A DNA stretch of 64,000 nucleotides from Macrostomum lignano. Its lineage: Eukaryota. The notes below the pieces were generated by a model. It did no database searches, was not told where the DNA came from, and saw only the letters and a program-made list of their open reading frames with translations. Below are positions 27,004 to 61,168 of the stretch, one piece after another. Numbering within the stretch: position 1 is the stretch's first letter; each line of letters starts with the position of its first letter. Where the stretch lies: contig NIVC01003246.1 in the NCBI GenBank assembly GCA_002269645.1, positions 45,215 to 109,214 on the forward strand. Direction: 5' to 3'. A program made the translations under genes and the position numbers.

Positions 27004-28572
27004 TCACTCCTTGCTCTTGCCGCGTCGGGTCAGCCGCAGCGGGAACTCGGGCGCCTCGATTCCCAGTGGCGACACGTCGTAGTGGAAGGGCATGGGCCCC
27101 CCGGTGGACTCCACCCGGCACTCGAGCAGCAGGCGCAGAGTGAAATTGTACAGCAGCTGCATCGCCAGCTTACTGCCGGCGCACTTGCGGAAGCCGGCCC
27201 CGAATGCGGGAAACGCGGCGCCGGCCGCCTCTAGGAAGGCGCCCTCCTCGTCCAGGAAGCGCCCTGGCTGGAAGGCGTCCGGCTCGGACCACAGCGAGGC
27301 GTCCCGACTGGCCGACCACATGTTGCAGAGCACGATGGTTCCCTTGGCCACCCTGGTGCCGCACTCCAGCGTGAAGTCCCTCACAGCGCAGTGCGGGATG
27401 AGGAACAGCAGGCCGCATGAGTGCCGCAGCACCTCGGCAATAAAGGCGCGCAGCTTCGGCAGCTGCTGTCGCTCGGCCCAGCTGATGGCGGTCCGGCCCG
27501 GTCCGAGCTGCTCCCGAAGCTCGTCGACTACACTGGCCTGCCAGTTTGGGTGCATCGCCAGGTAGTACAGAATCCAGCGCACAACCGACACCGTGGTGCT
27601 GACCGAGGCGCCCATGATGTCCGTGAGCAGCCGTCCGGCCGTTTCGTTGTTGCAGACGTCTCCAAACTCGTCCGATAGGCAGCGAGCCGCCTCCCCCGGT
27701 TGACGGCTCTCGGCGTCGCGATGGACCAGGTCCACTATTGCCGAGTCGACTTGGTCGGACACGCTCTTGAACTCGGCCAGCCGACCCGGCAGCAGGCGGG
27801 CAACTGGCGGCACCATGTCAGCCAGGCAGAGCAGCAGGGAGTTGTTGTTTCCTAGCGAGTGCACCGCGTCAACCACCTTCGTGAACGGCGAGTCCGGGTT
27901 GCTGATGCACCTCTCGAACCAGCCCGGAGTGCGAGCGTGCAGCACAGAGTACAGGATGGAGCTCATCCACTTCTTCAAGTGGCGCATGCTGCTCACTGGG
28001 CCGTCGGTGCCTTCGCCTAGAAGTCCATCGACAAGGCGCGCCGTCTCCTCGGAGGCGAGCTCCTCGACCAGGCCGGAGTAGCGCCTGTCGTAGCGAATCA
28101 GCCCGGCGTGCATGAGGCGGCGATCGCGCAGGTACCAGCTGCCAGAACCGAAGGCAACTGAGCGGCCGCCGCTGATTGTGCGGAAGGTGTTCCAGTCCGG
28201 CCGGTCGCAGATGTCCCTGCCGTGCTCGGTGAGCACATGTCGGATCGCAGCCGTGCCGTTGACCACCAGAGCAGGCCAGAGACCCATTCGGATGAAATAA
28301 ATGTTGCCGTACACTCGCGACCACTCCAGCAGGCGGATGTGCGGCTGGGTGCCCAACCTGGGCAGGTGGCCGATCACCGGGAAGCCCCACGGTCCGTGCT
28401 GACCTTTGACTCCGGTGCAGATGAGTGGCGCGGCCAGTACGCTCGCCACCTTGACCCAGAGCCACACCAGAAGGTAAATCAGGACTCCAGCGCACAGTCC
28501 GAGTCCGAGATCGACGCCCAGCTTAACTCCTCGCTCCGTTTCGCTCCCGCCGCTTTTGTTTTGGCTCTCCAT
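27004..28572 (-). CDS. Cytochrome P450, clan 2, CYP1-like; intronless, 522 aa
   Basis: N-terminal TM anchor; GPWGFPVIGHL Pro-rich hinge; RPDWNTFRTISGGRSVAFG; I-helix DIMGASVSTT; ExxR (EVLR); FQPGRFL; heme motif FGAGFRKCAG. Confidence 0.95.
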   Translation of the reverse strand: MESQNKSGGSETERGVKLGVDLGLGLCAGVLIYLLVWLWVKVASVLAAPLICTGVKGQHGPWGFPVIGHLPRLGTQPHIRLLEWSRVYGNIYFIRMGLWPALVVNGTAAIRHVLTEHGRDICDRPDWNTFRTISGGRSVAFGSGSWYLRDRRLMHAGLIRYDRRYSGLVEELASEETARLVDGLLGEGTDGPVSSMRHLKKWMSSILYSVLHARTPGWFERCISNPDSPFTKVVDAVHSLGNNNSLLLCLADMVPPVARLLPGRLAEFKSVSDQVDSAIVDLVHRDAESRQPGEAARCLSDEFGDVCNNETAGRLLTDIMGASVSTTVSVVRWILYYLAMHPNWQASVVDELREQLGPGRTAISWAERQQLPKLRAFIAEVLRHSCGLLFLIPHCAVRDFTLECGTRVAKGTIVLCNMWSASRDASLWSEPDAFQPGRFLDEEGAFLEAAGAAFPAFGAGFRKCAGSKLAMQLLYNFTLRLLLECRVESTGGPMPFHYDVSPLGIEAPEFPLRLTRRGKSKE

Positions 28573-30772: not shown

Positions 30773-31489
30773 GGTCGCTTGCTTGATAAAGTACGCCTGA
30801 ACCTCGCAAAAAACAAATCAGTCTGAGCTGAGCTATTTGGAATTTAATGCTGAAAATCTGCAAACTCCCTAAATTTACCGACTCATTTCATTCTGCTCTA
30901 ATTGCAAATTGCATCTCGGCTCGCATTACTGTGTGCACTTTTAATTTTATCTCTGAACCGCATGAGGAAGCCGCTGCCTGAATCGCTCAGGCTGCTGGCA
31001 ATAATGGCAGCTCATCTCCTTCAGACTCATTCAGCTTCTCAGCCAACTCTTAGTCCGCTAAAATCAATAAAGAAGAAAAGAGAAAAGCCGAACAACGCAG
31101 TTTCGCTGAGGCAGGGGCTGCTCAATAAACCAAGCCGAGTCCGCATCCATTAATGCGCCGTTCCTGTTGCCGGATGCAGCCGCTTTACAGCCTTATTATT
31201 TAGCTGTGTTTACAGCAGGCCTGTCAACAATTTATGCAGCAGGCAAAGTTGCGAGCTTCAGTTCTACCTGTACATTCTCGAGTAGCTGAGGCAGCTACCT
31301 GCAGAGATCAGCTAATTACCCAGTCTGTGTGACGAAAACAACATAATTCCAAACCCCTAGGGGGTCAATGAGAATCAGGCACCAGAACCCTCTGTTTCAG
31401 ATTTGGGCTGTGGAGCTTAGTAATTTAATAGTGCTTCAAATACATGCATTTTATACGTATCAATTTTGCCAATTTATGTTATCATTACA

Positions 31490-31940
<451 letters not shown>

Positions 31941-31986
31941 TGCTCGTTTGCTGCAGCAGTTATTGAAGACTTATGATTTTTGTATT

Positions 31987-34671
31987 TCAGGCCATCTCGT
32001 TGCTGCAAGATACGCCGTTATTGGCGGTGTAGAACTTGACGTTGCACTGCGCCTCTGGCACGGCGTAGGCTGCGTAAAGCTTCGGCGCGAACATGATGGC
32101 CAGCAGCAGACCGTGGGTCAGCACGCAAGAGAACACCATCAACTTGACGGCGGTGGCCAATGTGGTTGCCGTCAACGCAGCCGGGGTGAATGCCGCCCAG
32201 AGGAAGAGCGCGGAGGCGCCGGCCGCCAGGATGCACTTGCTGTCGTGAAAATTGTCGGGCAGTTGACGGGTCCGCAGCGCCAGCAGGCAGGTGGTGCCCA
32301 ATACCGGTAGGGTCAAGTTGCAGCCTAGCGGAGCCCAGAAGCTGACGGTCATGAGGTCGCACTGCCGCTCCACCCACGGCTTTGAGTCAGACGTTGTCGA
32401 GGCCGACTGACGGATGCGCGACTGCACGGGCCAGCGGAGACTGAGCCCAATGATGATGCCAGTCTGCAATGTTTTGTATAAATGGACAGGTAGTTGTTGG
32501 GTTGATAAGGCCGGTCAGCATCCCAGATCCCCATGCCTCACCATCAGCAGGACGAGACCAGCCAGCATCGCAGAAATCGGGCGCTGCCTTGCCAACTGCG
32601 GCGTCGGCCGGCCCGCCCCGGACGCTCTGAACACCAGCAGGATGCGCAGTGTCTTCACCAGCTGGCTGCAGTAGCAAACCGACAGGCCCAGCTGGGTGGC
32701 GGCGTTCGCGCAGCAGCAGGCGACGTCGGAAGCCTCAACTGCGATGGGTGCCAGGCCGGACAGACCGAGAAGGCTGCCGCAAAGGCAGGCCACCTGTCGG
32801 AAACAATTTAAAATGGTAGTTCGAGTTCCACACTAACAAATGCCACCAGTCTTACCGACAGCTGCACCGAGGACGCCTTGACTAGCCGATGCTCCCGCCG
32901 GTGCAGCAGCAACAGCAGCGCAGTCAGTGTCAGTGTGGCCAGGAGGGCCGCGCACACCAGGAGCCCCGGCAGCAGGAGATCTTCGTTCCAGCCGGCGACA
33001 GGCAACCGCTGGCAGGTCTCGGCCTCTGGCCAGAGGAACGTTGGGCAGGGCAGGCAGGCGAGGCCGTCCGAACCGGCGATTTCGCCCGGGAAGCAGGCGC
33101 GGCAGGTGAAGCAGCAGGCGTCGCTGGGCACCCGGATGTGGCCGGCTGGGCAGGGCGGGCTGCAGAACGAGGCCGCCGGTGCGGCAGTTTCGTTGTCCCA
33201 AACCCTCAGGCTGGAGCGCTGCGTCCATCGGGCGAACAATTTGAGCTCGCTGTCGGCTTCCTCGCGGCGCACGTCGTAGGCAGGCGCGGCATCGCCGCTG
33301 GAGTCGAAGCCGTCAAAGTCAGCGATAAAATGCCGGCGAGCTGTTGTTGAAAAATTTGACGCAGCAATGAGGGTGGAAATTCGAGGGCCAGTGATGCAGC
33401 TGAGTAGCTGGCTGAGGTTTCCCTCTGCGACGCTCGGCTGACACTCTTCGCTTAGGGCGACCGATTGGACGCTGTCGGCGATGAGCGTCAGCGAGTCCAG
33501 CATGCGAGCCAGCGGAGCCACTTTAACGTTGAGGCTTAAACGCGACAGAGAGGCGACCTTGGCACTGCACCCAGCTGATGTGACGTTGCCAGCAGCTGTG
33601 CAATTGCCAACGGAGAGAACCTTCTGCAGCTGAAAGCCGAACGGGAACTCCACCAGCTGGGCGAGGTTCAACGAGTGGTAAAAGCGGAGCAAGTCTGGCA
33701 CGGGAAACTGCGGAAAGGCTACGTAGAAGGCGCCCGAGTGTAGTCTTTGTACGAATCGGCGTTCGTGTCGGAGGTGATGATGGTGCCACCGCGGGAGGCG
33801 ATGCGGGCAAGCAGCCTGTCGGGCACCAGGCTGAATAGTTCGTACACGAGAAACACGGTCAAGTTTTGCCGAGAGTCGATGGCGTCCAGCGCGTCGGATA
33901 CGGAAGTGAGCTGGTTCAACGCCAGGGTGAAGGCAACGCACACCGGTGCAGCGGATTCGCTGGAGTTGCCTCCTTCGCTCGGTGCTGCAGCCAGTAGGAG
34001 CCTGGTGTTGTGCGCGAGGCCCCTCCCGTACACGTCGTCTCTGTGGATGATGGCCACGTAGGTCCAGCCGAAGTGGCGCACCAGCTGCACCGCGGCTCTG
34101 GCCTGGTGGCGATCCGGTGACACCAGCCGGTAGACGTTCGGGTACCGCTCCCGTCCGAGAACGCGTCGCTGCTGGACTCGGTGGACACCTGCGGCAGCTG
34201 GTAGGGCGACAGCAGACGTGACACGATGTCCGTGGTGCTGCTGTACCAGGCGGCCGCAGCGGCCTGAATGAGATAGACCGACTCCTCGATGCCGCTGAGC
34301 CGCTGAGAGCAGAAGGCGCCTCCGGCTGCAAGGGCGCCGTGCTGCCAGGCAGGGCGCAGGTTCTTCGTCAGACTGACGGCTGCGGCTGACGACATGCAGG
34401 GGTCCAAATGGACGAAGCCGAACGTCCATCCACGTGCGCGCAGCTCCGGGCGCAGCTGCTCCCTGTTGATTCTGTCGACAGCAAAGTGGACGGCGAGTCC
34501 TCGCAAGAACTGCGCCTCCGTGATGGGAAACTCCGCCTCGGCGCTGGCCAGGCAGTTGAACTCAGAATTCTGCACGATGGCCAAGTTGAAGACGCCGTCG
34601 CGACAGAACAGCTGCTGGCGGCAGTGAGCCGCCAGCAGAAGCTGCTGTAGCAGCATTAGGGAGATGAGCAT
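31987..34671 (-). CDS. Class C GPCR (mGluR/CaSR-like): signal peptide, Venus-flytrap, nine-Cys domain, 7TM; 3 exons, 2 apparent frameshifts
   Basis: Exons ~34671-32856, 32793-32542 and 32463-31987. Motifs: FAVDRIN, YPNVYRLVSPDRHQARAAVQLVRHFGWTYVAII, CSPPCPAGH...CCFTCRAC...CLPCP...WP...C, LVKASS, KTLRILLVF, TRQLPDNFHDSK, FAPKLY. The frame changes near 34152 and 33741. Confidence 0.85.
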
Positions 34672-35244
34672 GGAGAGGCTAGGACGAGCTGGCAGGCTGG
34701 CGGCAGACCGGCACATCGCCCGCAGCTGACCTGCCCAAATCCAGGCCAGTCAGGGCCCGCTCGTGCATTTCTGATTCGGTCAGCCATTCGGCGGCCAATC
34801 CGGCGAATTTTTCCCCGGCAGCAGGGCTGCCAAGCAAATCGAAGCGAAGCCTCGATGCCTATCGATCGGGTCAAGCTTAGTCACCTCTACAGTGACCTGC
34901 TGACAGGTGTGTGTATGAGAGAGTCAGAGGGCAGCACGATGCTTTTCCGGTGCACCCCGCACCGCAGAACAATGCAGAGCAGTGCAATCCAGTGAGCATA
35001 CTCGTAGCATTTCTGCAGAGTGGGTCACCTCCAGGCAAATCTGCGCCAAAACAGTCTGCTCTCGAGCTCGATAAGAGAGGACAGCAAAAACAAAAGCTGA
35101 TTAGATAAGAAATCTCGCACGGTGCCAGCTCTGTATTTATGGCGCGGCAACTCGCGGCCAGCTCAGACAACTCAGAGAGCCGGCCCTTCTTAGCTGATTT
35201 TTTAACACAAGTAAGCTTTACTCAGAACCCCTGCAAGTCTCTGA

Positions 35245-35738
35245 ATGGCGCTCAAACTGCAGCTCAGTCTGGCTCTGGCGCTCACCGTGCTGGCTGCCTC
35301 GCTGCGGACAGGCCACAGCTGCAACAGCGGAAACAGGGGCGGCTCCGGCTCCAAGTCCATCACCGACTCCGGCTCCGGCCGCCCCGTCCGCGTTTCCGGC
35401 TACGTCCTGCTGAACCCGGCACCGCAGCAGCTGCCAGTCAACACCCGTCTCGAAGTTCGCCTACAGGACATCTCGCTGATGGACGCGCCGTCGAAGCTGC
35501 TTGGCAGCCAGACGCTCAACTCGGTGTCGACGAGTTACAACGCCGACCGCCGGATCCCCTTCAGCCTGGAGGCGTGATCCCTGCGGACACGCCCTTCATG
35601 CCCCACTCGGTGTCCGTGTCGGCCTCCTTGCGTGGCGACGGCGTCTCCTACATCACCGACACTGCCTACTACGTGAACCTTCAGGAGGGCACCTTCGAGT
35701 ACCGCGACATGGAGATCACCATCATCAAGTACCCGTGA
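35245..35738 (+). CDS. Secreted YbaY/YscW-like (bacterial lipoprotein-type) domain protein; intronless, ~164 aa after repair of one frameshift at ~35571
   Basis: Signal peptide MALKLQLSLALALTVLAAS; VSGYV...LPVNTRLEVRLQDISLMDAPSKLLGSQTL...IPFSLE(G)V...VSASLRGDGVSYITDTAY. This parallels the YbaY pattern VSGTV...LPPDAVLTVTLSDASLADAPSKVLA...PFSF...SAAI...FITDT (recalled, not searched). Confidence 0.75.
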
Positions 35739-36039
35739 AGCTGCTGGGTACCTGAAGCTAACCTGATCATGCGTAAATGAGCGACGTTGTTGACGGTTTC
35801 ATAAGCTCGCGATTTATAACTAATTACGAGATACGAGTATCTACTTGTAAAATTCACTTTATAAATACAATTTTCATCTGGTCTTTAAGGAAAGGTTATC
35901 CTCATCAGTGTAGGCTACTTATAGTAGACAAACGCAACAACAATATGCAAAGCCGGATTTGAGATTTATTGGTTAAATATTTTAAATATGAACGCTTTAA
36001 TAAGCAAACTGTAAATAACTGCTGTTAACTGTCAACTTT

Positions 36040-38577
36040 TCAATTGTCCGTGGCGAAGTAGTAAGGCAGCAATGAGCTGTTCCTCAGGTACAGCAGACAG
36101 CAGATGGACTGGAAAACTCTCAGGTAGCACAACAGCAGCACCACCACCACGACTGAGTCGACTGGCCACGGCACCAATTCGAGGCACTTCTGCACCACCT
36201 CCACGTTGACGTCGTCCAATAGAAAGTTTCTCTCTAAGAGCAGTGCGGAGTAGCATTTGGCTTCTGCCCCATTCTGTCCGGTTTTTATCCCGTTTCTGTC
36301 CGGTTCCTGTCCAGTTTCTGTCCAGTTTCTGTCCAGTTTCTGTCCCCATTCTGTCCGGTTCCTTTCCAGTTTCTGTCCGGCTTCTGCCCCCATTCTGTCC
36401 AGTTTCTGTCCAGTTTCTGTCCCCATTCTGTCCGGTTCCTTTCCAGTTTCTGTCCGGCTTCTGCCCCCATTCTGTCCAGTTTCTGTCCAGTTTCTGTCCA
36501 GTTTCTATCCCGTTTCTGTCCAGTTTCTGTCCAGTTTCTGTCCGGCTTCTGCCCCCATTCTGTCCAGTTTCTGTCCAGTTTCTGTCCCTATTCTGTCCGG
36601 TTCCTGTCCAGTTTCTGTCCGGCTTCTGCCCCCATTCTGTCCAGTTTCTGTCCAGTTTCTGTCCCCATTCTATCCCGTTTCTGTCCTGTTTCTGTCCAGT
36701 TTCTGTCCAGTTTCTGTCCTGTTTCTGTCCAGTTTTTGTCCAGTTTCTGTCCTGTTTCTGTCCAGTTTCTGTCCAGTTTCTGTCCAGTTTCTGTCCCCAT
36801 TCTATCCCATTTTTAGCCAGTTTCTGTCCAGTTTCCGTCCGGTTTCTGTCCAGTTTCTGTCCGGTTTCTGTCCAGTTTCTGTCCAGTTTCTGTCCGGTTT
36901 CTGTCCAGTTTCTGTCCAGTTTCTGTCCAGTTTCTGTCCAGTTTCTGTCCCCATTCTGTCCAGTTTCTGTCCGGCTTCTGTCCCCATTCTGTCCGGTTTC
37001 TGTCCCCATTCTGTCCGGTTCCTGTTCCAGTTCCAAGCAGCAGAGCCGGCGCTTACCCAGCAGTTTGGGCACCAGCGGGTCGGTCCTGGTGATGGCCACG
37101 GTCATCAGGATGTACACGTTGGCCAGCAGGAAGCTCAGGCCGCACACCACATTTTCAACTTGGCGAAAGCGAAGCACCGTGGCAAAGAAGCCCATCAGGC
37201 CGACTGGGCGTTGAGCAGGTGGGGTGGAAGACCTGCTGCGTCACCAGCTACTGCCATTCCCTGTGCCATTCCCTGTGCCATTCCCTGTGCCATTCCCTGT
37301 GCCATTCCCTGTGCCATTCCCTGTGCCATTCCCTGTGCCATTCCCTGTGCCATTCCCTGTGCCATTCCCTGTGCCATTCCCTGTGCCATTCCCTGTGCCA
37401 TTCCCTGTGCCATTCTCTGTGCCATTCCCTGTGCCATTCCCTGTGCCATTCCCTGTGCCATTCCCTGTGCCATTCCCTGTGCCATTCCCTGTGCCATTCC
37501 CTGTGCCATTCCCTGTACCATTCCCTGTGCCATTCTCTGTACCATTCCCTGTGCCATTCTCTGTGCCATTCCCTGTGCCATTCCCTGTGCCATTCCCTGT
37601 GCCATTCCCTGTGCCATTCCCTGTGCCATTCCCTGTGCCATTCCCTGTGCCATTCCCTGTGCCATTCCCTGTGCCATTCTCTGTGCCATTCCCTGTGCCA
37701 TTCCCTGTGCCATTCTCTGTGCCATTCCCTGTGCCATTACCTACTGCCATTCACTGTGCCATTCCCTGTGCCATTACCTACTGCCATTCACTGTGCCATT
37801 ACCTACTGCCATTCACTGTGCCATTCCCTGTGCCATTACCTACTGCCATTCACTGTGCCATTCCCTGTGCCATTCCCTGTGCCATTCCCTGTGCCATTCC
37901 CTGTGCCATTCCCTGTGCCATTCCCTGTGCCATTCCCTGTGCCATTCTCTGTGCCATTCCCTGTACCATTCCCTGTGCCATTCCCTGTGCCATTCCCTGT
38001 GCCATTCCCTGTACCATTCCCTGTGCCATTCCCTGTGCCATTCTCTGTGCCATTCTCTGTGCCATTCCCTGTGCCATTCCCTGTGCCATTTCCTGTGCCA
38101 TTACCTACTGCCATTCACTGTGCCATTCCCTGTGCCATTACCTACTGCCATTCACTGTGCCATTCCCTGTGCCATTACCTACTGCCATTCACTGTGCCAT
38201 TCCCTGTGCCATTACCTACTGCCATTCACTGTGCCATTACCTACTGCCATTCTCTGTGCCATTACCTACTGCCATTCCCTGTGCCATTACCTACTGCCAT
38301 TCCCTGTGCCACTATCTACTGCCATTCCATGTGCCATTACCTACTGCCATCCCCAAAACCACGCCCCTGTCTTACCCGCCATGCTCTCCCCGTTGATCAT
38401 GAAGCCGAGCATGGTGGCCTTGTACATGATGCAGTCGATGTTGGACACGTCCTTGGAAATTTCCTTGGTGCGCACTTTGCGCCTGAGGCTCTGCGACAGC
38501 ACGGTGAAAATTGTCAGCGTGGCGCCGCTCAGCATAACAAGGATGTAGCAGCTTGCTGCGATAAATCTTGTGGTCAT
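36040..38577 (-). CDS. Uncharacterised 4-TM, tetraspanin-like topology protein (~200 aa, 3 exons, probable frameshift ~37207)
   Basis: Exons 38577-38376 (donor G|GTAAGA), ~37240-37057 (donor G|GTAAGC) and 36263-36040 with compatible phase. Four hydrophobic segments: [82 protein letters not shown]. Cys-containing loop between TM3 and TM4. Confidence 0.5.
36265..37020. repeat. 11-bp-based minisatellite (CCAGTTTCTGT and variants) filling an intron
   Basis: Tandem units between acceptor 36264 and donor 37056. Confidence 0.92.
37250..38350. repeat. 12-bp minisatellite (GCCATTCCCTGT) with interspersed ACCTACTGCCATT variants
   Basis: About 90 units filling an intron; source of the AIPC/CHSL/PFPV pseudo-ORFs. 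Confidence 0.95.
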
Positions 38578-58905: not shown

Positions 58906-61168
58906 TTACCAAAACGAGCACTTTTCACTCGGGTTCATCGTCTGCCGGACTCCGCACTGGAAGACTTGGGCAAATCCTTTGCTATTCTCCATCATTCCGC
59001 GAACGCGCAGATGCGGCGGGCTGTGCTTGATGTTCTTGAAGCGCCGCTTTAGAGCCGCTGGCTCGGCCTTCGTGCACCAGGCCTGCGCCGCTTGAACGAA
59101 GAACAGTCGCTCGGCGTCAGTTCAGATGGCAGGTTCGGCAGCTGCAGCCGGCGACCAGTCTCGCCCTGTAATTGCATGGCACAGCGATGTCATTGCCCAG
59201 AGTCGTATTGGAGCCGTGCGGTACGCCGGGCACCAGCTCATAGGAGCCGTATCGAGAACGCACGCATTCGACCCGGCGCAGGTACTCCTCGGTGGTCCGG
59301 TTGTCCCAGTGGTTACCGTGGATTCCCTCCTTGTTGAGCTGGCGGCCTTTGATGTCGAATGCGTGACCGATTTCATGACCAACGACCAATCCCAGGCCGC
59401 CCAGGTTCATGTAGTCAGGATAGTCCCTATGGTACATCGGAGGCGACAGTATTCCCATGGGAAACACGATCTCGTTGCGCCGCATGTAGTTGTACGCATT
59501 AGTTGTAAGGCCACTTAAAGTGAGAAAGGCTGTGGTAGCCGAGCTGTTTTCCGTCGATAGCACGCCGAACTTCTTTCGTGCCGATGCCCAGAGCGCAATG
59601 GAGAACAACCTGCCAAAGTCCTTATCCACTGAGACTTTCGAATATCGGCCTTTTCGAAAGGAATTAATAGCAGGCGAATAGTACGCAGAAAGTTGGTCGG
59701 CTGACAAGACCTCAAACCCTATTGTGTGCTTGAGCGACAGAAGCTTTTCAATAATGATATCTTTCGTATCCGACTCTATCCAGTCCTGATTAAGCACGCT
59801 GTTAACTGTTGCATTCTCCAGGAGGTCGATCAAATTCTGCACATGCTCAAAGTTCTCTGCATGGTAGGCCTTCTGATACATTCGCTCAACTACTGGAGAC
59901 AGCAAGTCTTTAGTGCGCTTCATGCATGCATCTACCGGTCTCCCCACTGCTTTATCCATCACATCTTCTCTCAGTGGGGACTCAGTCCACATGCGCTCTA
60001 AACGCATGGGTAGGAACCTCGCAAAACTTAGCAGCCAGTCAACAACAAGAAAGCTTTGGTAAATGGAGAGCTTTCTACTGGCTGAATATGTTGATTTCTT
60101 TTTGAAGTACGTCACAAAGTTTATTACTCGCTTTGGATTCTCCAGCTCCACCAAGGCATCCGGGTCGTAGTCAGACTGAACCAGCTCGTCAAAGAATAGG
60201 CTCCACGAAAATGGATCAGCTGGGTTTGCACATTGACTAAGCGCATCTAGATCACGGATCTTGTGCTGCTGTTGCTTGGCAAGCTTGCTGCAGCCATCCG
60301 ACCAATTAGCGTATCGTTCGGACTGCTGGATCTGTTTTAGAACTCGACTGAAACTGAAACTCTCGTTAGCGATGGTCAGAACAGTCGCTCCGCCAATAGA
60401 ACTGAAAAATGTTAATATGGGCTCGAAATTGGACATTGAGCGGTAGAGCTTTGTACTTGCTGAAATAACCACTCTGCTAGCCTTTCTTAGCTTATTGCTG
60501 TCGCCTCGCTTCAGCTCTCGAATGTATGATGAGGACACGCGGACATCAAACATAGTATGGACATCCGTATTCACAATGCGGGCTAAGATTGATTCGATTG
60601 TCCGATTAGACCGTCTTGGACTGACGGCTTCAACAAGATGCTTGAGAAGGCTAGAGAAGAAATGCTGAGCCGCAACTGTGTCATTTTTCATGGATCTATA
60701 GCGCATCCATTTGGTGCAACTGCGAAAAAGCATCCTTGTAAGGTTGTACAAGTCTCTAACTTTCGGATCCGTGCTGTTGACTACCCAGTCCAGCATCAGC
60801 ACTTCGAACAGATTGCTGCGTAGTTGATTTCGCATCACAGAGTAGGAGTTCTGGTAGAAGGTCGGGCCAGTTAGCTTTAATGACTTGAAAACCTCATCGG
60901 GGTCGTATTTGTAGTTCACTGGAAAGTTGCCGCATGCGTAGTTGTAAAAGTCAACGCATGGATTTGCGCTGAAATTCATCTTGCTAGAAACAGCGGCAGA
61001 GAGTGCAACACAGGCTGACGCTTGGCATACGCTTGTTGCTGGTTAATCATTGCGTGATTGCTCTCGACAGAGCGGCAGCTGAGAACTGCTGTTAGCCTCT
61101 TCTGTCACAGACTGATCCGTCGATGGCACCGCGGAGACAACCGCTAGAAACGCGAATAAAGCGAGCAT
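58906..61168 (-). pseudogene. M13 neprilysin/ECE-like metallopeptidase, intronless, with disruptions (possible pseudogene or sequence errors)
   Basis: Signal-like MLALFAFLAVVSA; in-frame TAA at 61043-61045; PCVDFYNYACG; NAY...NEIVFPMGILSPP; NLGGLGLVVGHEIGHAFD; TLGNDIA. After frame changes (~59170, ~59112): LFFVQAAQAWC...HSPPHLRV...MNPSEKCSFW* at 58906. Confidence 0.75.

What the first reader, a model, noticed from the sequence alone, without database searches (positions are those of the whole stretch)
35245..35738. Bacterial YbaY/YscW-type lipoprotein domain in an animal genome: horizontal-transfer candidate
Seen: an intronless, GC-rich ORF with a eukaryote-style signal peptide and blocks VSGYV, LEVRLQDISLMDAPSKLL, IPFSL, VSASL and YITDT. 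It is embedded between genes with spliceosomal introns, so it is not a contaminant contig. Known: YbaY/YscW (pilotin/secretin-chaperone-related lipoproteins) is a mainly proteobacterial family. Inference: this is a domesticated bacterial gene now secreted by the animal. A Cys follows the signal region (GHS-C), loosely echoing the lipoprotein Cys. The GPCR start lies only ~570 bp away, head-to-head.
Basis: partly seen in the sequence, partly recalled or inferred. Interest (0 to 1): 0.78.

Follow-up and report, generated by a model that had tools for sequence, protein, structure and literature searches.

The report
Flatworm gene with bacterial pilotin-like fold
This is a real nuclear gene of the flatworm Macrostomum lignano for a small secreted protein with a fold otherwise typical of bacterial outer-membrane lipoproteins; its nearest relatives are a second flatworm gene and stony-coral genes, so any bacterial origin is old rather than a recent transfer.

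Summary
At 35245-35738 (+) there is an intronless, GC-rich ORF for a 164-aa protein. It has a signal peptide, a single Cys, a Gly/Ser-rich linker and a YscW/YbaY domain (Pfam PF09619, 33.2 bits against a cut-off of 22.6). The AlphaFold2 model is confident, and its best PDB match is the Vibrio cholerae pilotin 5wec.

The window is Macrostomum lignano. The ORF is broken by one missing G at 35574. A collinear public contig carries the intact gene (BOX15_Mlig025402g1). The window shows the same deletion bias in the neighbouring GPCR, so an assembly error is most likely.

Contamination is excluded. Both neighbours have GT-AG introns, and codon GC3 matches the neighbouring genes.

The horizontal-transfer interpretation is only partly supported. 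Domain by domain, the best relatives are a second M. lignano paralogue and scleractinian coral proteins. Bacterial proteins score lower (39% identity or less), and no donor was found. Neighbour-joining places the protein beside this eukaryote-like group in 131 of 150 bootstraps. Group profiles, however, score animal and bacterial models equally, and the N-terminus looks like that of a bacterial lipoprotein.

Best reading: a divergent, secreted member of an undescribed animal branch of a bacterial family, probably from an ancient transfer. Its function is unknown; a ligand-binding role is inferred.

The parts
35245..35574 (+). First part of the coding sequence (codons 1-110, Met1 to Ala110), in the frame of the ATG at 35245.
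   Evidence: ORF list and sequence. Identical to the intact gene on L001 except for K37E.
35574..35574 (+). Frameshift site. One G here stands for GG in the intact copy, a single-base deletion in the window.
   Evidence: Alignments with L001. Nine of the ten single-base indels in 31400-35800 are deletions in the window, and two of them break the neighbouring GPCR, which is intact in L001.
35574..35738 (+). Second part of the coding sequence (Val111 to Pro164 plus the TGA stop), shifted by one base relative to the first part.
   Evidence: Tail of ORF 35139..35738. The repaired translation matches P0001.
35245..35319 (+). Predicted signal peptide, residues 1-25 (MALK, the hydrophobic core LQLSLALALTVLAASL, then RTGHS).
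   Evidence: Read from the sequence. The model gives a low-confidence helix at residues 5-17. No dedicated signal-peptide predictor was available, so the cleavage site is inferred.
35320..35322 (+). Cys26, the only cysteine of the protein, directly after the predicted signal peptide.
   Evidence: Read from the sequence. TGHS-C does not fit the lipobox consensus.
35323..35382 (+). Gly/Ser-rich linker, residues 27-46, predicted disordered.
   Evidence: pLDDT is below 50 for residues 22-27 and 29-36, and the 10-residue block means stay at or below 51 up to residue 40. E. coli YbaY is listed among outer-membrane lipoproteins with a disordered N-terminal linker (doi 10.1101/2021.01.05.425367).
35383..35735 (+). 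YscW/YbaY-like beta-sandwich domain, residues 47-164, interrupted by the frameshift at 35574.
   Evidence: Pfam PF09619 at 33.2 bits. AlphaFold2 block means are 85 or higher, mostly 90 or higher, from residue 51 to 164, with eight strands. Foldseek best hit is 5wec_A, E = 8.7e-8, TM 0.75 on the target.
34717..35244 (.). 528-bp divergent intergenic region between the GPCR start (34716, - strand) and the start of this gene. Presumed to hold a shared or back-to-back promoter and the 5' UTR.
   Evidence: Coordinates. The promoter function is inferred and was not tested.
31987..34716 (-). Upstream neighbour, head-to-head: a class-C GPCR (ANF_receptor, NCD3G, 7tm_3) with GT-AG introns at 32794..32855 and 32464..32541. 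In this window it is broken by single-base deletions at 33735 and 34152.
   Evidence: Pfam, splice sites and open joined ORF, indels, intact 661-aa ORF in L001.
36040..37195 (-). Downstream neighbour, tail-to-tail: the last two coding exons of a small membrane-protein gene, with an 823-nt GT-AG intron (36234..37056) that holds an 11-nt minisatellite.
   Evidence: Joining at these sites gives an open frame ending at a stop. The same position on L001 is annotated as a spliced gene with a 180-aa product spanning 3.2 kb. Tandem repeat array.

Best explanation
The feature is a genuine, single-exon nuclear gene of Macrostomum lignano (public model Mlig025402.g1). It encodes a small secreted protein built from a signal peptide, one Cys, a disordered Gly/Ser-rich linker and one YscW/YbaY-type beta-sandwich domain.

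It is a divergent member of a small branch of this mostly bacterial family that lives in eukaryotic genomes. That branch also holds a second M. lignano paralogue without a signal peptide, and domain-only and membrane-anchored forms in stony corals. The branch most likely descends from a bacterial gene captured long ago, not from a recent transfer into this worm.

The frameshift in the window is most likely a single-base assembly error.

Mechanism (inferred, not shown): the protein enters the ER through its signal peptide and is released outside the cell. The beta-sandwich then acts as a non-catalytic binding module through the surface built around the family-wide D-[VI]-S-L-M-D-A-P-S loop. It cannot be a pilotin in the bacterial sense, because it lacks a lipobox, and (from established knowledge) animals have no Lgt/Lsp/Lol pathway and no secretins.
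For: Real gene:
- An intact 164-aa ORF lies on an independent contig at 99% identity.
- That annotation is built from RNA-seq transcripts (PMC5730564).
- Between the two copies the coding sequence has 2 substitutions in 494 bases, against about 2% in the flanks.

Family and fold:
- Pfam YscW at 33.2 bits, above the 22.6 cut-off.
- 5wec by sequence, E = 6e-4.
- AlphaFold2 10-residue block means of 85-94 across the domain.
- Foldseek best hit 5wec, E = 8.7e-8.

Host integration:
- The neighbours are a class-C GPCR, a P450 and an M13 peptidase.
- Both direct neighbours have GT-AG introns.
- GC3 is 0.88, against 0.83 for the P450 and the 7tm exon.

Eukaryote branch:
- Named members are M. lignano PAA66317/PAA94389, Montipora XP_068754246/XP_068699677 and Stylophora PFX24036.
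- Per-domain scores of this protein are highest for coral P0059 (47 bits), the paralogue P0006 (46) and other corals (40-45), all aligned to the C-terminal ...KY end. The best bacterial domains reach about 36 bits.
- P0006 is unambiguously of the coral type: 110 bits on the coral profile against 38 on the bacterial one.
- The sister group of this protein is purely animal/eukaryote-like in 131 of 150 neighbour-joining bootstraps.

No close donor:
- Among 1.84 billion representative proteins, the best hit outside M. lignano has E = 1e-8.
- The 56 prokaryote loci that share the motif reach at most 39% identity.

Assembly error: nine of ten single-base indels against L001 are deletions in the window, and two of them break the GPCR.
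Against: - Group profiles do not separate the options for this protein: animal 61, coral 55 and bacterial 59 bits.
- The protein lacks the insertion NVGWxxxxxxW[IV]RKGDY that marks the coral/P0006 clade. At that place it keeps a bacteria-like DG..[FY]ITDT hairpin.
- It matches the bacterial Pfam model over more of its length than the coral proteins do.
- Its N-terminal layout (signal peptide, a single Cys, then a disordered linker) is that of a bacterial outer-membrane lipoprotein.
- The exact eukaryote-like split I had defined in advance (without P0033) was recovered in only 61 of 200 neighbour-joining bootstraps.
- The tree method is simple and the domain is short.
- Several 'eukaryote-like' sequences are unnamed metagenome proteins, and their eukaryotic origin is inferred.
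- Expression, secretion and any binding partner are untested here.
Confidence: 0.6

Rival explanations
1. Independent, direct transfer (essentially the first reader's reading): a whole bacterial YbaY-type lipoprotein gene moved into the Macrostomum lineage separately from the older coral/P0006 clade. The signal peptide, the Cys at +1 and the linker are relics of the bacterial lipoprotein precursor.
For: - The layout is signal peptide, a single Cys, a Gly/Ser-rich linker and the domain.
- The bacterial profile scores as high as the animal one (59 vs 61 bits).
- The Pfam match covers nearly the full bacterial model, whereas coral proteins match only its first half.
- The animal-clade insertion is absent.
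- BLASTP to the Microbulbifer YbaY lipoprotein gives 39% identity over 124 residues.
- The coding sequence has no intron.
- No orthologue at 50-90% identity was found in any other organism.
Against: - The best per-domain hits are animal proteins.
- The sister group is bacterial only in 7 of 150 bootstraps.
- The C-terminal EG..EY..D.E....KY end, with the stop at or within two codons of it, is shared with P0006 and most coral proteins, and is absent from the bacterial sequences inspected.
- The lipobox is not kept (TGHS-C).
- Codon composition is fully host-like, so any transfer is not recent.
- No donor above 39% identity was found.
Confidence: 0.22
2. The copy in this window is a pseudogene: a decaying duplicate in the partly duplicated M. 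lignano genome. The working gene is the copy on NIVC01001733.
For: - The frame is broken at 35574.
- The adjacent GPCR is also broken in this copy.
- The genome holds 180 Mb of duplicated blocks at 95% identity or more (PMC5730564).
- The window and L001 differ by about 2%.
Against: - The single-base indels are almost all deletions in the window (9 of 10), including in non-coding DNA. That is the signature of long-read consensus error rather than of decay.
- The coding sequence is otherwise nearly identical, with 2 differences in 494 bases and fewer than in the flanks.
- There are no further stops or larger lesions.
Confidence: 0.15
3. Contamination or a chimeric contig: the ORF belongs to a bacterium and was joined to flatworm DNA by mis-assembly.
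For: The family is mainly bacterial and the ORF has no intron.
Against: - The same arrangement (GPCR, this gene, then a spliced membrane-protein gene) is found on a second contig over more than 19 kb.
- There is no sequence discontinuity.
- GC3 is host-like.
- No bacterial protein exceeds 39% identity.
- The gene model is derived from transcripts.
Confidence: 0.01

Closest known systems
Pfam PF09619 YscW (type III secretion lipoprotein chaperone; the YscW/ExsB pilotins and the YbaY family of outer-membrane lipoproteins)
   Same: - The profile match is above the curated threshold over almost the whole model.
- The family-wide D-[VI]-S-L-x-D-A-P-[SA] loop and the ...ITDT strand are present.
- The domain is a single all-beta domain of about 115 residues, preceded by a signal peptide, a Cys and a disordered linker, as in E. 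coli YbaY.
   Different: - There is no lipobox, and (from established knowledge) the host lacks the lipoprotein-maturation and Lol machinery.
- There is no secretin and no secretion-system gene nearby; the neighbours are animal genes.
- No NCBIfam bacterial model matches.
- The score is far below that of true bacterial members (33 against 98 bits for Microbulbifer YbaY).
PDB 5wec, titled 'alternative pilotin from the type II secretion system of Vibrio cholerae'
   Same: It is the best sequence match in the PDB (E = 6e-4). It is also the best structural match, and with chain B the only entry below E = 0.001 (E = 8.7e-8, TM 0.75 normalised on the target, 27% identity).
   Different: 5wec is a bacterial lipoprotein that works with a secretin. 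The flatworm protein has an extra C-terminal strand segment (EG..EY..D.E....KY) shared with the coral proteins. RMSD is 3.5 A. No functional equivalence was tested.
Animal YscW-like proteins found here: M. lignano Mlig029119/Mlig033311 (PAA66317, PAA94389), Montipora XP_068754246/XP_068699677, Stylophora PFX24036 and about 25 unnamed coral-like clusters
   Same: - They are the closest relatives per domain.
- Where the genomic ORF was examined, the coding sequence is a single exon.
- They share the C-terminal end of the domain, with the protein stopping at or within a few residues of ...KY in most of them.
- They sit in ordinary animal chromosomes, including a 74.7-Mb Montipora scaffold and a position next to a Meis/PKNOX homeobox gene in M. 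lignano.
   Different: - Those proteins carry the insertion NVGWxxxxxxW[IV]RKGDY, which this protein lacks.
- They have no signal peptide (123-aa forms, P0006) or an N-terminal membrane anchor (209-255-aa forms) instead of a cleavable signal peptide.
- Identity to this protein is only 27-36%.
Two-domain YscW-like proteins of Mortierellaceae fungi (Gamsiella, Gryganskiella, Lunasporangiospora, Benniella, Mortierella, Entomortierella)
   Same: They are eukaryotic carriers of the same Pfam domain, with the identical DVSLMDAPS motif.
   Different: - They are much closer to the bacterial model (111 bits for two domains).
- They form their own cluster, recovered in 159 of 200 bootstraps and embedded among bacterial sequences in the tree, away from the animal set.
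- They have no signal peptide.
- They most likely represent a separate acquisition.

Membership tests
Pfam PF09619 YscW / YbaY domain family | The protein scores above the curated gathering threshold of the family profile. | tested here: met
   33.2 bits against 22.6, E = 7.2e-8, profile positions 5-98 of 107.
Pfam PF09619 YscW / YbaY domain family | The fold matches a solved family member (all-beta sandwich). | tested here: met
   AlphaFold2 10-residue block means are 85-94 for residues 51-164. Foldseek best hit is 5wec_A, E = 8.7e-8, TM 0.75 on the target. 5wec is also the only significant PDB sequence hit.
Bacterial pilotin / outer-membrane lipoprotein (YscW, ExsB, YbaY as functional class) | A lipoprotein signal peptide with the lipobox [LVI][ASTVI][GAS]-C. 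| tested here: not met
   The residues before Cys26 are G-H-S (TGHS-C). Positions -3 and -2 do not fit, and only the Cys and the small residue at -1 agree.
Bacterial pilotin / outer-membrane lipoprotein (YscW, ExsB, YbaY as functional class) | It is encoded with, or acts on, a secretin of a type II or type III secretion system. | tested here: not met
   The neighbours are a class-C GPCR, a small spliced membrane-protein gene, a P450 and an M13 peptidase. No secretion-system gene was seen in the window among the ORFs scanned.
NCBIfam bacterial protein families (YbaY-type models) | A match to a curated NCBIfam model. | tested here: not met
   No family at E up to 10.
Horizontally acquired gene in an animal genome | It is physically linked to undoubted host genes and is not a contaminant. 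| tested here: met
   Flanking genes have GT-AG introns. The same order holds on a second contig. GC3 is host-like.
Horizontally acquired gene in an animal genome | It nests inside a donor (bacterial) clade with strong support. | tested here: inconclusive
   The eukaryote-like group sits among bacterial sequences in the neighbour-joining tree, but deep nodes are weak. The nearest neighbours of this protein are animal, not bacterial. Group profiles tie.
Horizontally acquired gene in an animal genome | It is absent from related animals (restricted, patchy distribution). | tested here: inconclusive
   Named animal carriers are only M. lignano and scleractinian corals. No orthologue at 50-90% identity was found anywhere. 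However, the profile searches were limited by their word index, and other Macrostomum genomes could not be searched.
Horizontally acquired gene in an animal genome | It is transcribed in the host. | not testable with these tools
   Support is indirect only. The public gene model comes from an annotation built from RNA-seq (PMC5730564). The gene id was not found in any paper or supplement searched.
Animal YscW-like clade (defined here: P0006 plus the coral proteins) | The C-terminal EG..EY..D.E....KY strand, with the stop at or within two codons of it. | tested here: met
   QEGTFEYRDMEITIIKYP-stop here, IEGQTEYEMDISLIHYN-stop in P0006 and EDGKNSYNVDVELFKY-stop in coral P0047.
Animal YscW-like clade (defined here: P0006 plus the coral proteins) | The insertion NVGWxxxxxxW[IV]RKGDY before the ...TDT strand. 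| tested here: not met
   This protein reads SLRGDGVSYITDT at that position. The 12-residue insertion is missing.

The most novel reading that the evidence does not exclude
The same bacterial lipoprotein family has been captured by eukaryotes at least three separate times: the coral/flatworm clade, this Macrostomum gene on its own, and Mortierellaceae fungi.

On this reading the gene is a whole bacterial lipoprotein precursor that still works in an animal secretory pathway. Its bacterial-type signal peptide directs export, and the N-terminal Cys exposed after cleavage is a possible acylation site, as in Hedgehog-type N-palmitoylation.

Repeated capture would point to a selectable activity. One example would be a secreted decoy that binds bacterial secretin or pilotin partners at the animal's surface.
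Probability: 0.12. Interest if true: 0.75.

Novelty: new variant of a known kind. Interest (0 to 1): 0.45.

Why it matters
The YscW/YbaY domain is known only from bacterial envelope lipoproteins, and even there the function of YbaY is unknown. This work finds an undescribed set of eukaryotic genes with the domain in a flatworm, in stony corals and in Mortierellaceae fungi. They come in secreted, membrane-anchored, domain-only and multi-repeat forms. No paper in the searchable library mentions them.

If the animal branch stems from an old bacterial gift, it is a tidy case for studying how a bacterial envelope module is re-used by animals. M. lignano offers transgenesis (PMC5730564) and, from my own knowledge, RNAi to test it.

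The strictly conserved DVSLMDAPS loop across bacteria, fungi and animals suggests a shared ligand. Finding that ligand in the animal could also clarify the bacterial family.

On the practical side, the result shows that the window's assembly carries single-base deletions that break real genes.

Tried and rejected
- NCBIfam scan of the repaired protein: no hit.
- Fold search against viral structures: nothing below E = 0.001, so there is no sign of a viral vector.
- Literature: no paper contains the gene id Mlig025402 or the PDB code 5wec. The three papers that contain PF09619 are all on bacteria, judging from their titles and abstracts; I did not open them.
- The search combining YscW, YbaY and 'eukaryot' returned only bacterial secretion papers. 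The search combining M. lignano and horizontal gene transfer returned unrelated families.
- Supplement searches of four M. lignano papers for the three gene ids: no occurrence, so no expression pattern could be taken from the literature.
- The first scan of prokaryote genomes with a mixed alignment failed for lack of a conserved stretch. The second worked but is limited to genomes with the exact motif D[VIA]SLMDAPS.
- tblastn of homologues against the window: only this one locus, so there is no tandem paralogue here.
- I considered that GC-richness marks foreign DNA and rejected it. Neighbouring host exons have the same GC3.
- I considered that the Cys reflects a working lipobox and rejected it, because positions -3 and -2 do not fit.
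- I considered chance similarity and rejected it on the profile, PDB and fold evidence.
- Exact clade bootstraps for sets I had defined in advance were low, partly because P0033 had been left out of the set. The sister-group count is the more useful figure, but it still comes from a simple distance method.
Full report
**What is in the window.**
- Positions 35245-35738 on the + strand carry an ORF that begins MALKLQLSLALALTVLAASLRTGHSC. It runs for 110 codons to a TGA at 35575-35577.
- The rest of the protein (VIPADTPFMPHSVSVSASLRGDGVSYITDT...IIKYP) continues in another frame to the stop at 35736-35738.
- The break is a single base. A collinear contig reads GGAGGCGGTGATC where the window reads GGAGGCGTGATC.
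- The repaired 164-aa protein differs in one residue (K37E) from a public protein, hypothetical protein BOX15_Mlig025402g1 of Macrostomum lignano (P0001).

**Organism and locus.**
- P0001 is encoded on NIVC01001733.1 of assembly GCA_002269645.1 (locus L001).
- The window is collinear with that contig over more than 19 kb at 96-99% identity. The window is therefore M. lignano: a second assembly, an allele or a recent duplicate.
- The published genome holds 180 Mb of duplicated blocks at 95% identity or more (PMC5730564).

**Is the frameshift real?**
- Between 31400 and 35800 the window differs from L001 by ten single-base indels, and nine of them are deletions in the window.
- Two of these deletions (33735 and 34152) split the extracellular domain of the neighbouring GPCR into overlapping frames. 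In L001 the same region is one open 661-aa ORF.
- A one-sided excess of single-base deletions, in coding and non-coding DNA alike, is what consensus errors of long-read assemblies look like. I read the frameshift as an artefact, at about 0.8.
- The alternative is a decaying duplicate.
- Apart from the deletion, the coding sequence differs at 2 of 494 positions, against 1.5-3.3% in the surrounding segments. The direct comparison with the intergenic region is only suggestive (Fisher p = 0.066).

**Not a contaminant.**
- The upstream neighbour on the - strand is a class-C GPCR with ANF_receptor, NCD3G and 7tm_3 domains.
- Its first ATG is at 34716, 529 bp from the ATG of this gene, and the two genes are head-to-head.
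- It has two short canonical GT-AG introns (32794..32855 and 32464..32541). All three joined exon segments are whole numbers of codons, and the joined frame stays open to a stop.
- The downstream neighbour on the - strand has an 823-nt GT-AG intron (36234..37056) filled with an 11-nt minisatellite. On L001 it is annotated as a spliced gene.
- Further out lie a P450 and an M13 peptidase.
- The ORF has 64% GC and GC3 of 0.88. The P450 and the 7tm exon next door both have GC3 of 0.83. GC-richness is therefore the local coding style, not a foreign signature.

**Family and fold.**
- The repaired protein hits Pfam YscW (PF09619) with E = 7.2e-8 and 33.2 bits. The gathering score is 22.6, and the match covers profile positions 5-98 of 107.
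- No NCBIfam model matches.
- The only significant PDB sequence hit is 5wec (E = 6e-4).
- An AlphaFold2 model built on 26 homologues gives 10-residue block means of pLDDT between 85 and 94 from residue 51 to 164, with eight strands. Confidence is low for the signal peptide and the Gly/Ser-rich stretch.
- Foldseek against the PDB returns 5wec, 'alternative pilotin from the type II secretion system of Vibrio cholerae'. The figures are E = 8.7e-8 and TM 0.75 on the target, and no other entry scores below E = 0.001.
- No viral structure matches.

**Relatives.**
- An exhaustive phmmer search of 1.84 billion representative proteins found only 34 hits at E up to 0.001. The best one outside M. lignano had E = 1e-8.
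- The hits fall into two kinds.
  - The first kind is bacterial single- or multi-repeat YbaY-type proteins. Examples are the YbaY family lipoprotein of Microbulbifer litoralis and an Anaerolineae MAG.
  - The second kind is eukaryotic or eukaryote-looking proteins.
- Cluster look-ups name the following:
  - a second M. lignano paralogue (PAA66317, PAA94389);
  - Montipora capricornis and M. foliosa proteins, the former on a 74.7-Mb scaffold;
  - Stylophora pistillata PFX24036;
  - three Mortierellaceae fungi.
- Two profile searches added about 25 unnamed coral-like clusters of 122-255 aa, some on contigs of 0.6-2.5 Mb. They also added more Mortierellaceae (Benniella, Mortierella, Entomortierella).
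- The coral proteins come as a 123-aa domain-only form and a 209-255-aa form with an N-terminal membrane anchor. Where I looked, the coding sequence is a single ORF.
- The M. lignano paralogue lies next to a Meis/PKNOX homeobox gene. It is a single coding exon directly after a tttccag acceptor, and it has no signal peptide in that exon.

**Where this protein sits.**
- *Per-domain scores.* Its best matches are coral P0059 (47 bits), the paralogue P0006 (46) and further corals (40-45). All align to the very C-terminus. The best bacterial single domains reach about 36 bits.
- *BLASTP.* The picture is the same but with a narrow margin: 66 bits to P0006, 57-62 to corals and 42-54 to bacteria.
- *The paralogue.* P0006 is unambiguous: 86-91 bits to corals against 33 to bacteria, and 110 against 38 bits on the coral and bacterial group profiles.
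- *Group profiles.* For this protein they tie: animal 61, coral 55 and bacterial 59 bits.
- *Neighbour-joining tree.* A tree of 72 domains places it at the base of the group that holds P0006, the corals and the metagenomic eukaryote-like proteins.
- *Bootstraps.* In trees rooted on a distant bacterial domain, its sister group is purely animal/eukaryote-like in 131 of 150 replicates and purely bacterial in 7.
- *Prokaryote genomes.* A scan of one genome per prokaryote species for the motif D[VIA]SLMDAPS gave 56 loci (Variovorax, Sphingopyxis, Sulfurovum, Methanosarcinaceae and others). None exceeds 39% identity, and none aligns through to the last residues of the domain; the furthest reaches residue 117 of 121.

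**Features that pull the other way.**
- The coral/P0006 clade carries a 12-residue insertion (NVGWxxxxxxW[IV]RKGDY). This protein lacks it and reads SLRGDGVSYITDT, close to the bacterial DG..[FY]ITDT hairpin.
- It matches the Pfam model over nearly its full length, whereas the coral proteins match only the first half to three-quarters.
- Its N-terminus has a signal peptide, the only Cys of the protein and then a disordered Gly/Ser-rich linker. This is the layout of bacterial outer-membrane lipoproteins, and E. coli YbaY is listed among those with such a linker.
- The lipobox itself is not kept (TGHS-C).
- These points keep a separate, direct transfer alive as a rival. I put it at about 0.2.

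**Interpretation.**
- The gene is real and host-integrated. It is probably expressed, because the public model comes from an annotation built from RNA-seq.
- It encodes a secreted single-domain protein of the YscW/YbaY fold.
- It most likely belongs, as a divergent member, to an animal branch of this bacterial family. That branch is shared with stony corals and is undescribed in the literature I could search.
- Three observations make an origin by transfer from bacteria plausible: the family is overwhelmingly bacterial, its distribution in animals is patchy, and the coding sequences examined have no introns. The transfer would be old, because no donor is recognisable and the composition is fully host-like.
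- The fungal proteins are far closer to the bacterial model (111 bits for two domains) and cluster apart. They look like a separate event.

**Function.**
- Nothing here tests function.
- Membership of the pilotin or lipoprotein functional class fails on two defining features that I could test: the lipobox and a link to a secretin.
- The most defensible mechanism is export through the ER, followed by action as a non-catalytic binding module. The binding surface would be formed by the D-[VI]-S-L-M-D-A-P-S loop, which hardly varies across bacteria, fungi and animals.
- Which ligand it binds is open.
- The lone N-terminal Cys could form a disulfide-linked dimer or be acylated. Both ideas are speculation.

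**Verdict.**
- The horizontal-transfer interpretation is partly supported. The domain is of a bacterial type and sits in an animal genome. However, the nearest relatives are animal genes, so this is not a demonstrable recent domestication.
- Interest is moderate.

Noticed in passing
window 33735, 34152, 34807, 34826, 35093, 35227, 35574: The window carries a run of single-base deletions relative to the public M. lignano contig. Nine of the ten single-base indels in 4.4 kb are deletions in the window. Two of them split the class-C GPCR into overlapping frames. This looks like systematic consensus error in the assembly the window comes from.
   Followed up: partly
window 36262-37032 and 37252-38354: There are two large minisatellites. 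One is an 11-nt unit (TTCTGTCCAGT and variants, about 70 copies) that fills the intron of the downstream gene. The other is a 12-nt unit (TGCCATTCCCTG, about 91 copies). Both produce long spurious ORFs on both strands. BLAST against L001 gives many staggered, offset alignments across the 12-nt array.
   Followed up: partly
L007 8022-8423 (NIVC01001569.1): This is a second M. lignano YscW-like gene (Mlig029119; a near-identical copy is Mlig033311). It is of the coral type, with the NVGW...RKGDY insertion. It is a single coding exon right after a tttccag acceptor, has no signal peptide in that exon, and lies next to a Meis/PKNOX homeobox gene. The public protein is marked partial, so an upstream exon cannot be excluded.
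   Followed up: partly
L004 1-772 and 6799-12372 (ENA ERZ25067868 contig, coral-like): About 5 kb upstream of a 123-aa coral-type gene lies a second ORF with a weak YscW hit (21.8 bits), suggesting tandem paralogues. Directly downstream is a tight cluster of ORFs that includes a YqaJ-like viral recombinase domain. The cluster could be a mobile element or a viral insertion.
   Followed up: partly
P0005 (956 aa, JGI metagenome contig of 3 kb); relatives P0144 and P0150: This is a eukaryote-looking secreted protein. It has a signal peptide, a Thr-rich mucin-like stretch and five YscW-like repeats, each with a conserved Cys framework (GWC...EW[IL]R.GDYLS...CY). The source organism is unknown.
   Followed up: no
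P0008, P0018, P0022, P0046, P0147, P0149, P0159: Mortierellaceae fungi (Gamsiella, Gryganskiella, Lunasporangiospora, Benniella, Mortierella, Entomortierella) encode one- or two-domain YscW-like proteins without signal peptides. These are much closer to the bacterial model than the animal proteins are. From my own knowledge these fungi often host bacterial endosymbionts, so a separate transfer is plausible.
   Followed up: no
L009, L056, L058: Methanosarcinaceae archaea (two MAGs and Methanolobus sp. ZRKC3) carry the domain with the exact DxSLMDAPS motif. The family is therefore not confined to bacteria.
   Followed up: no
window 27004-28572 (-) and 59117-60979 (-): Two long uninterrupted ORFs encode a cytochrome P450 (522 aa, E = 2e-58) and an M13 (neprilysin-type) peptidase (620 aa). 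In this window they are intact single ORFs, unlike the GPCR.
   Followed up: no
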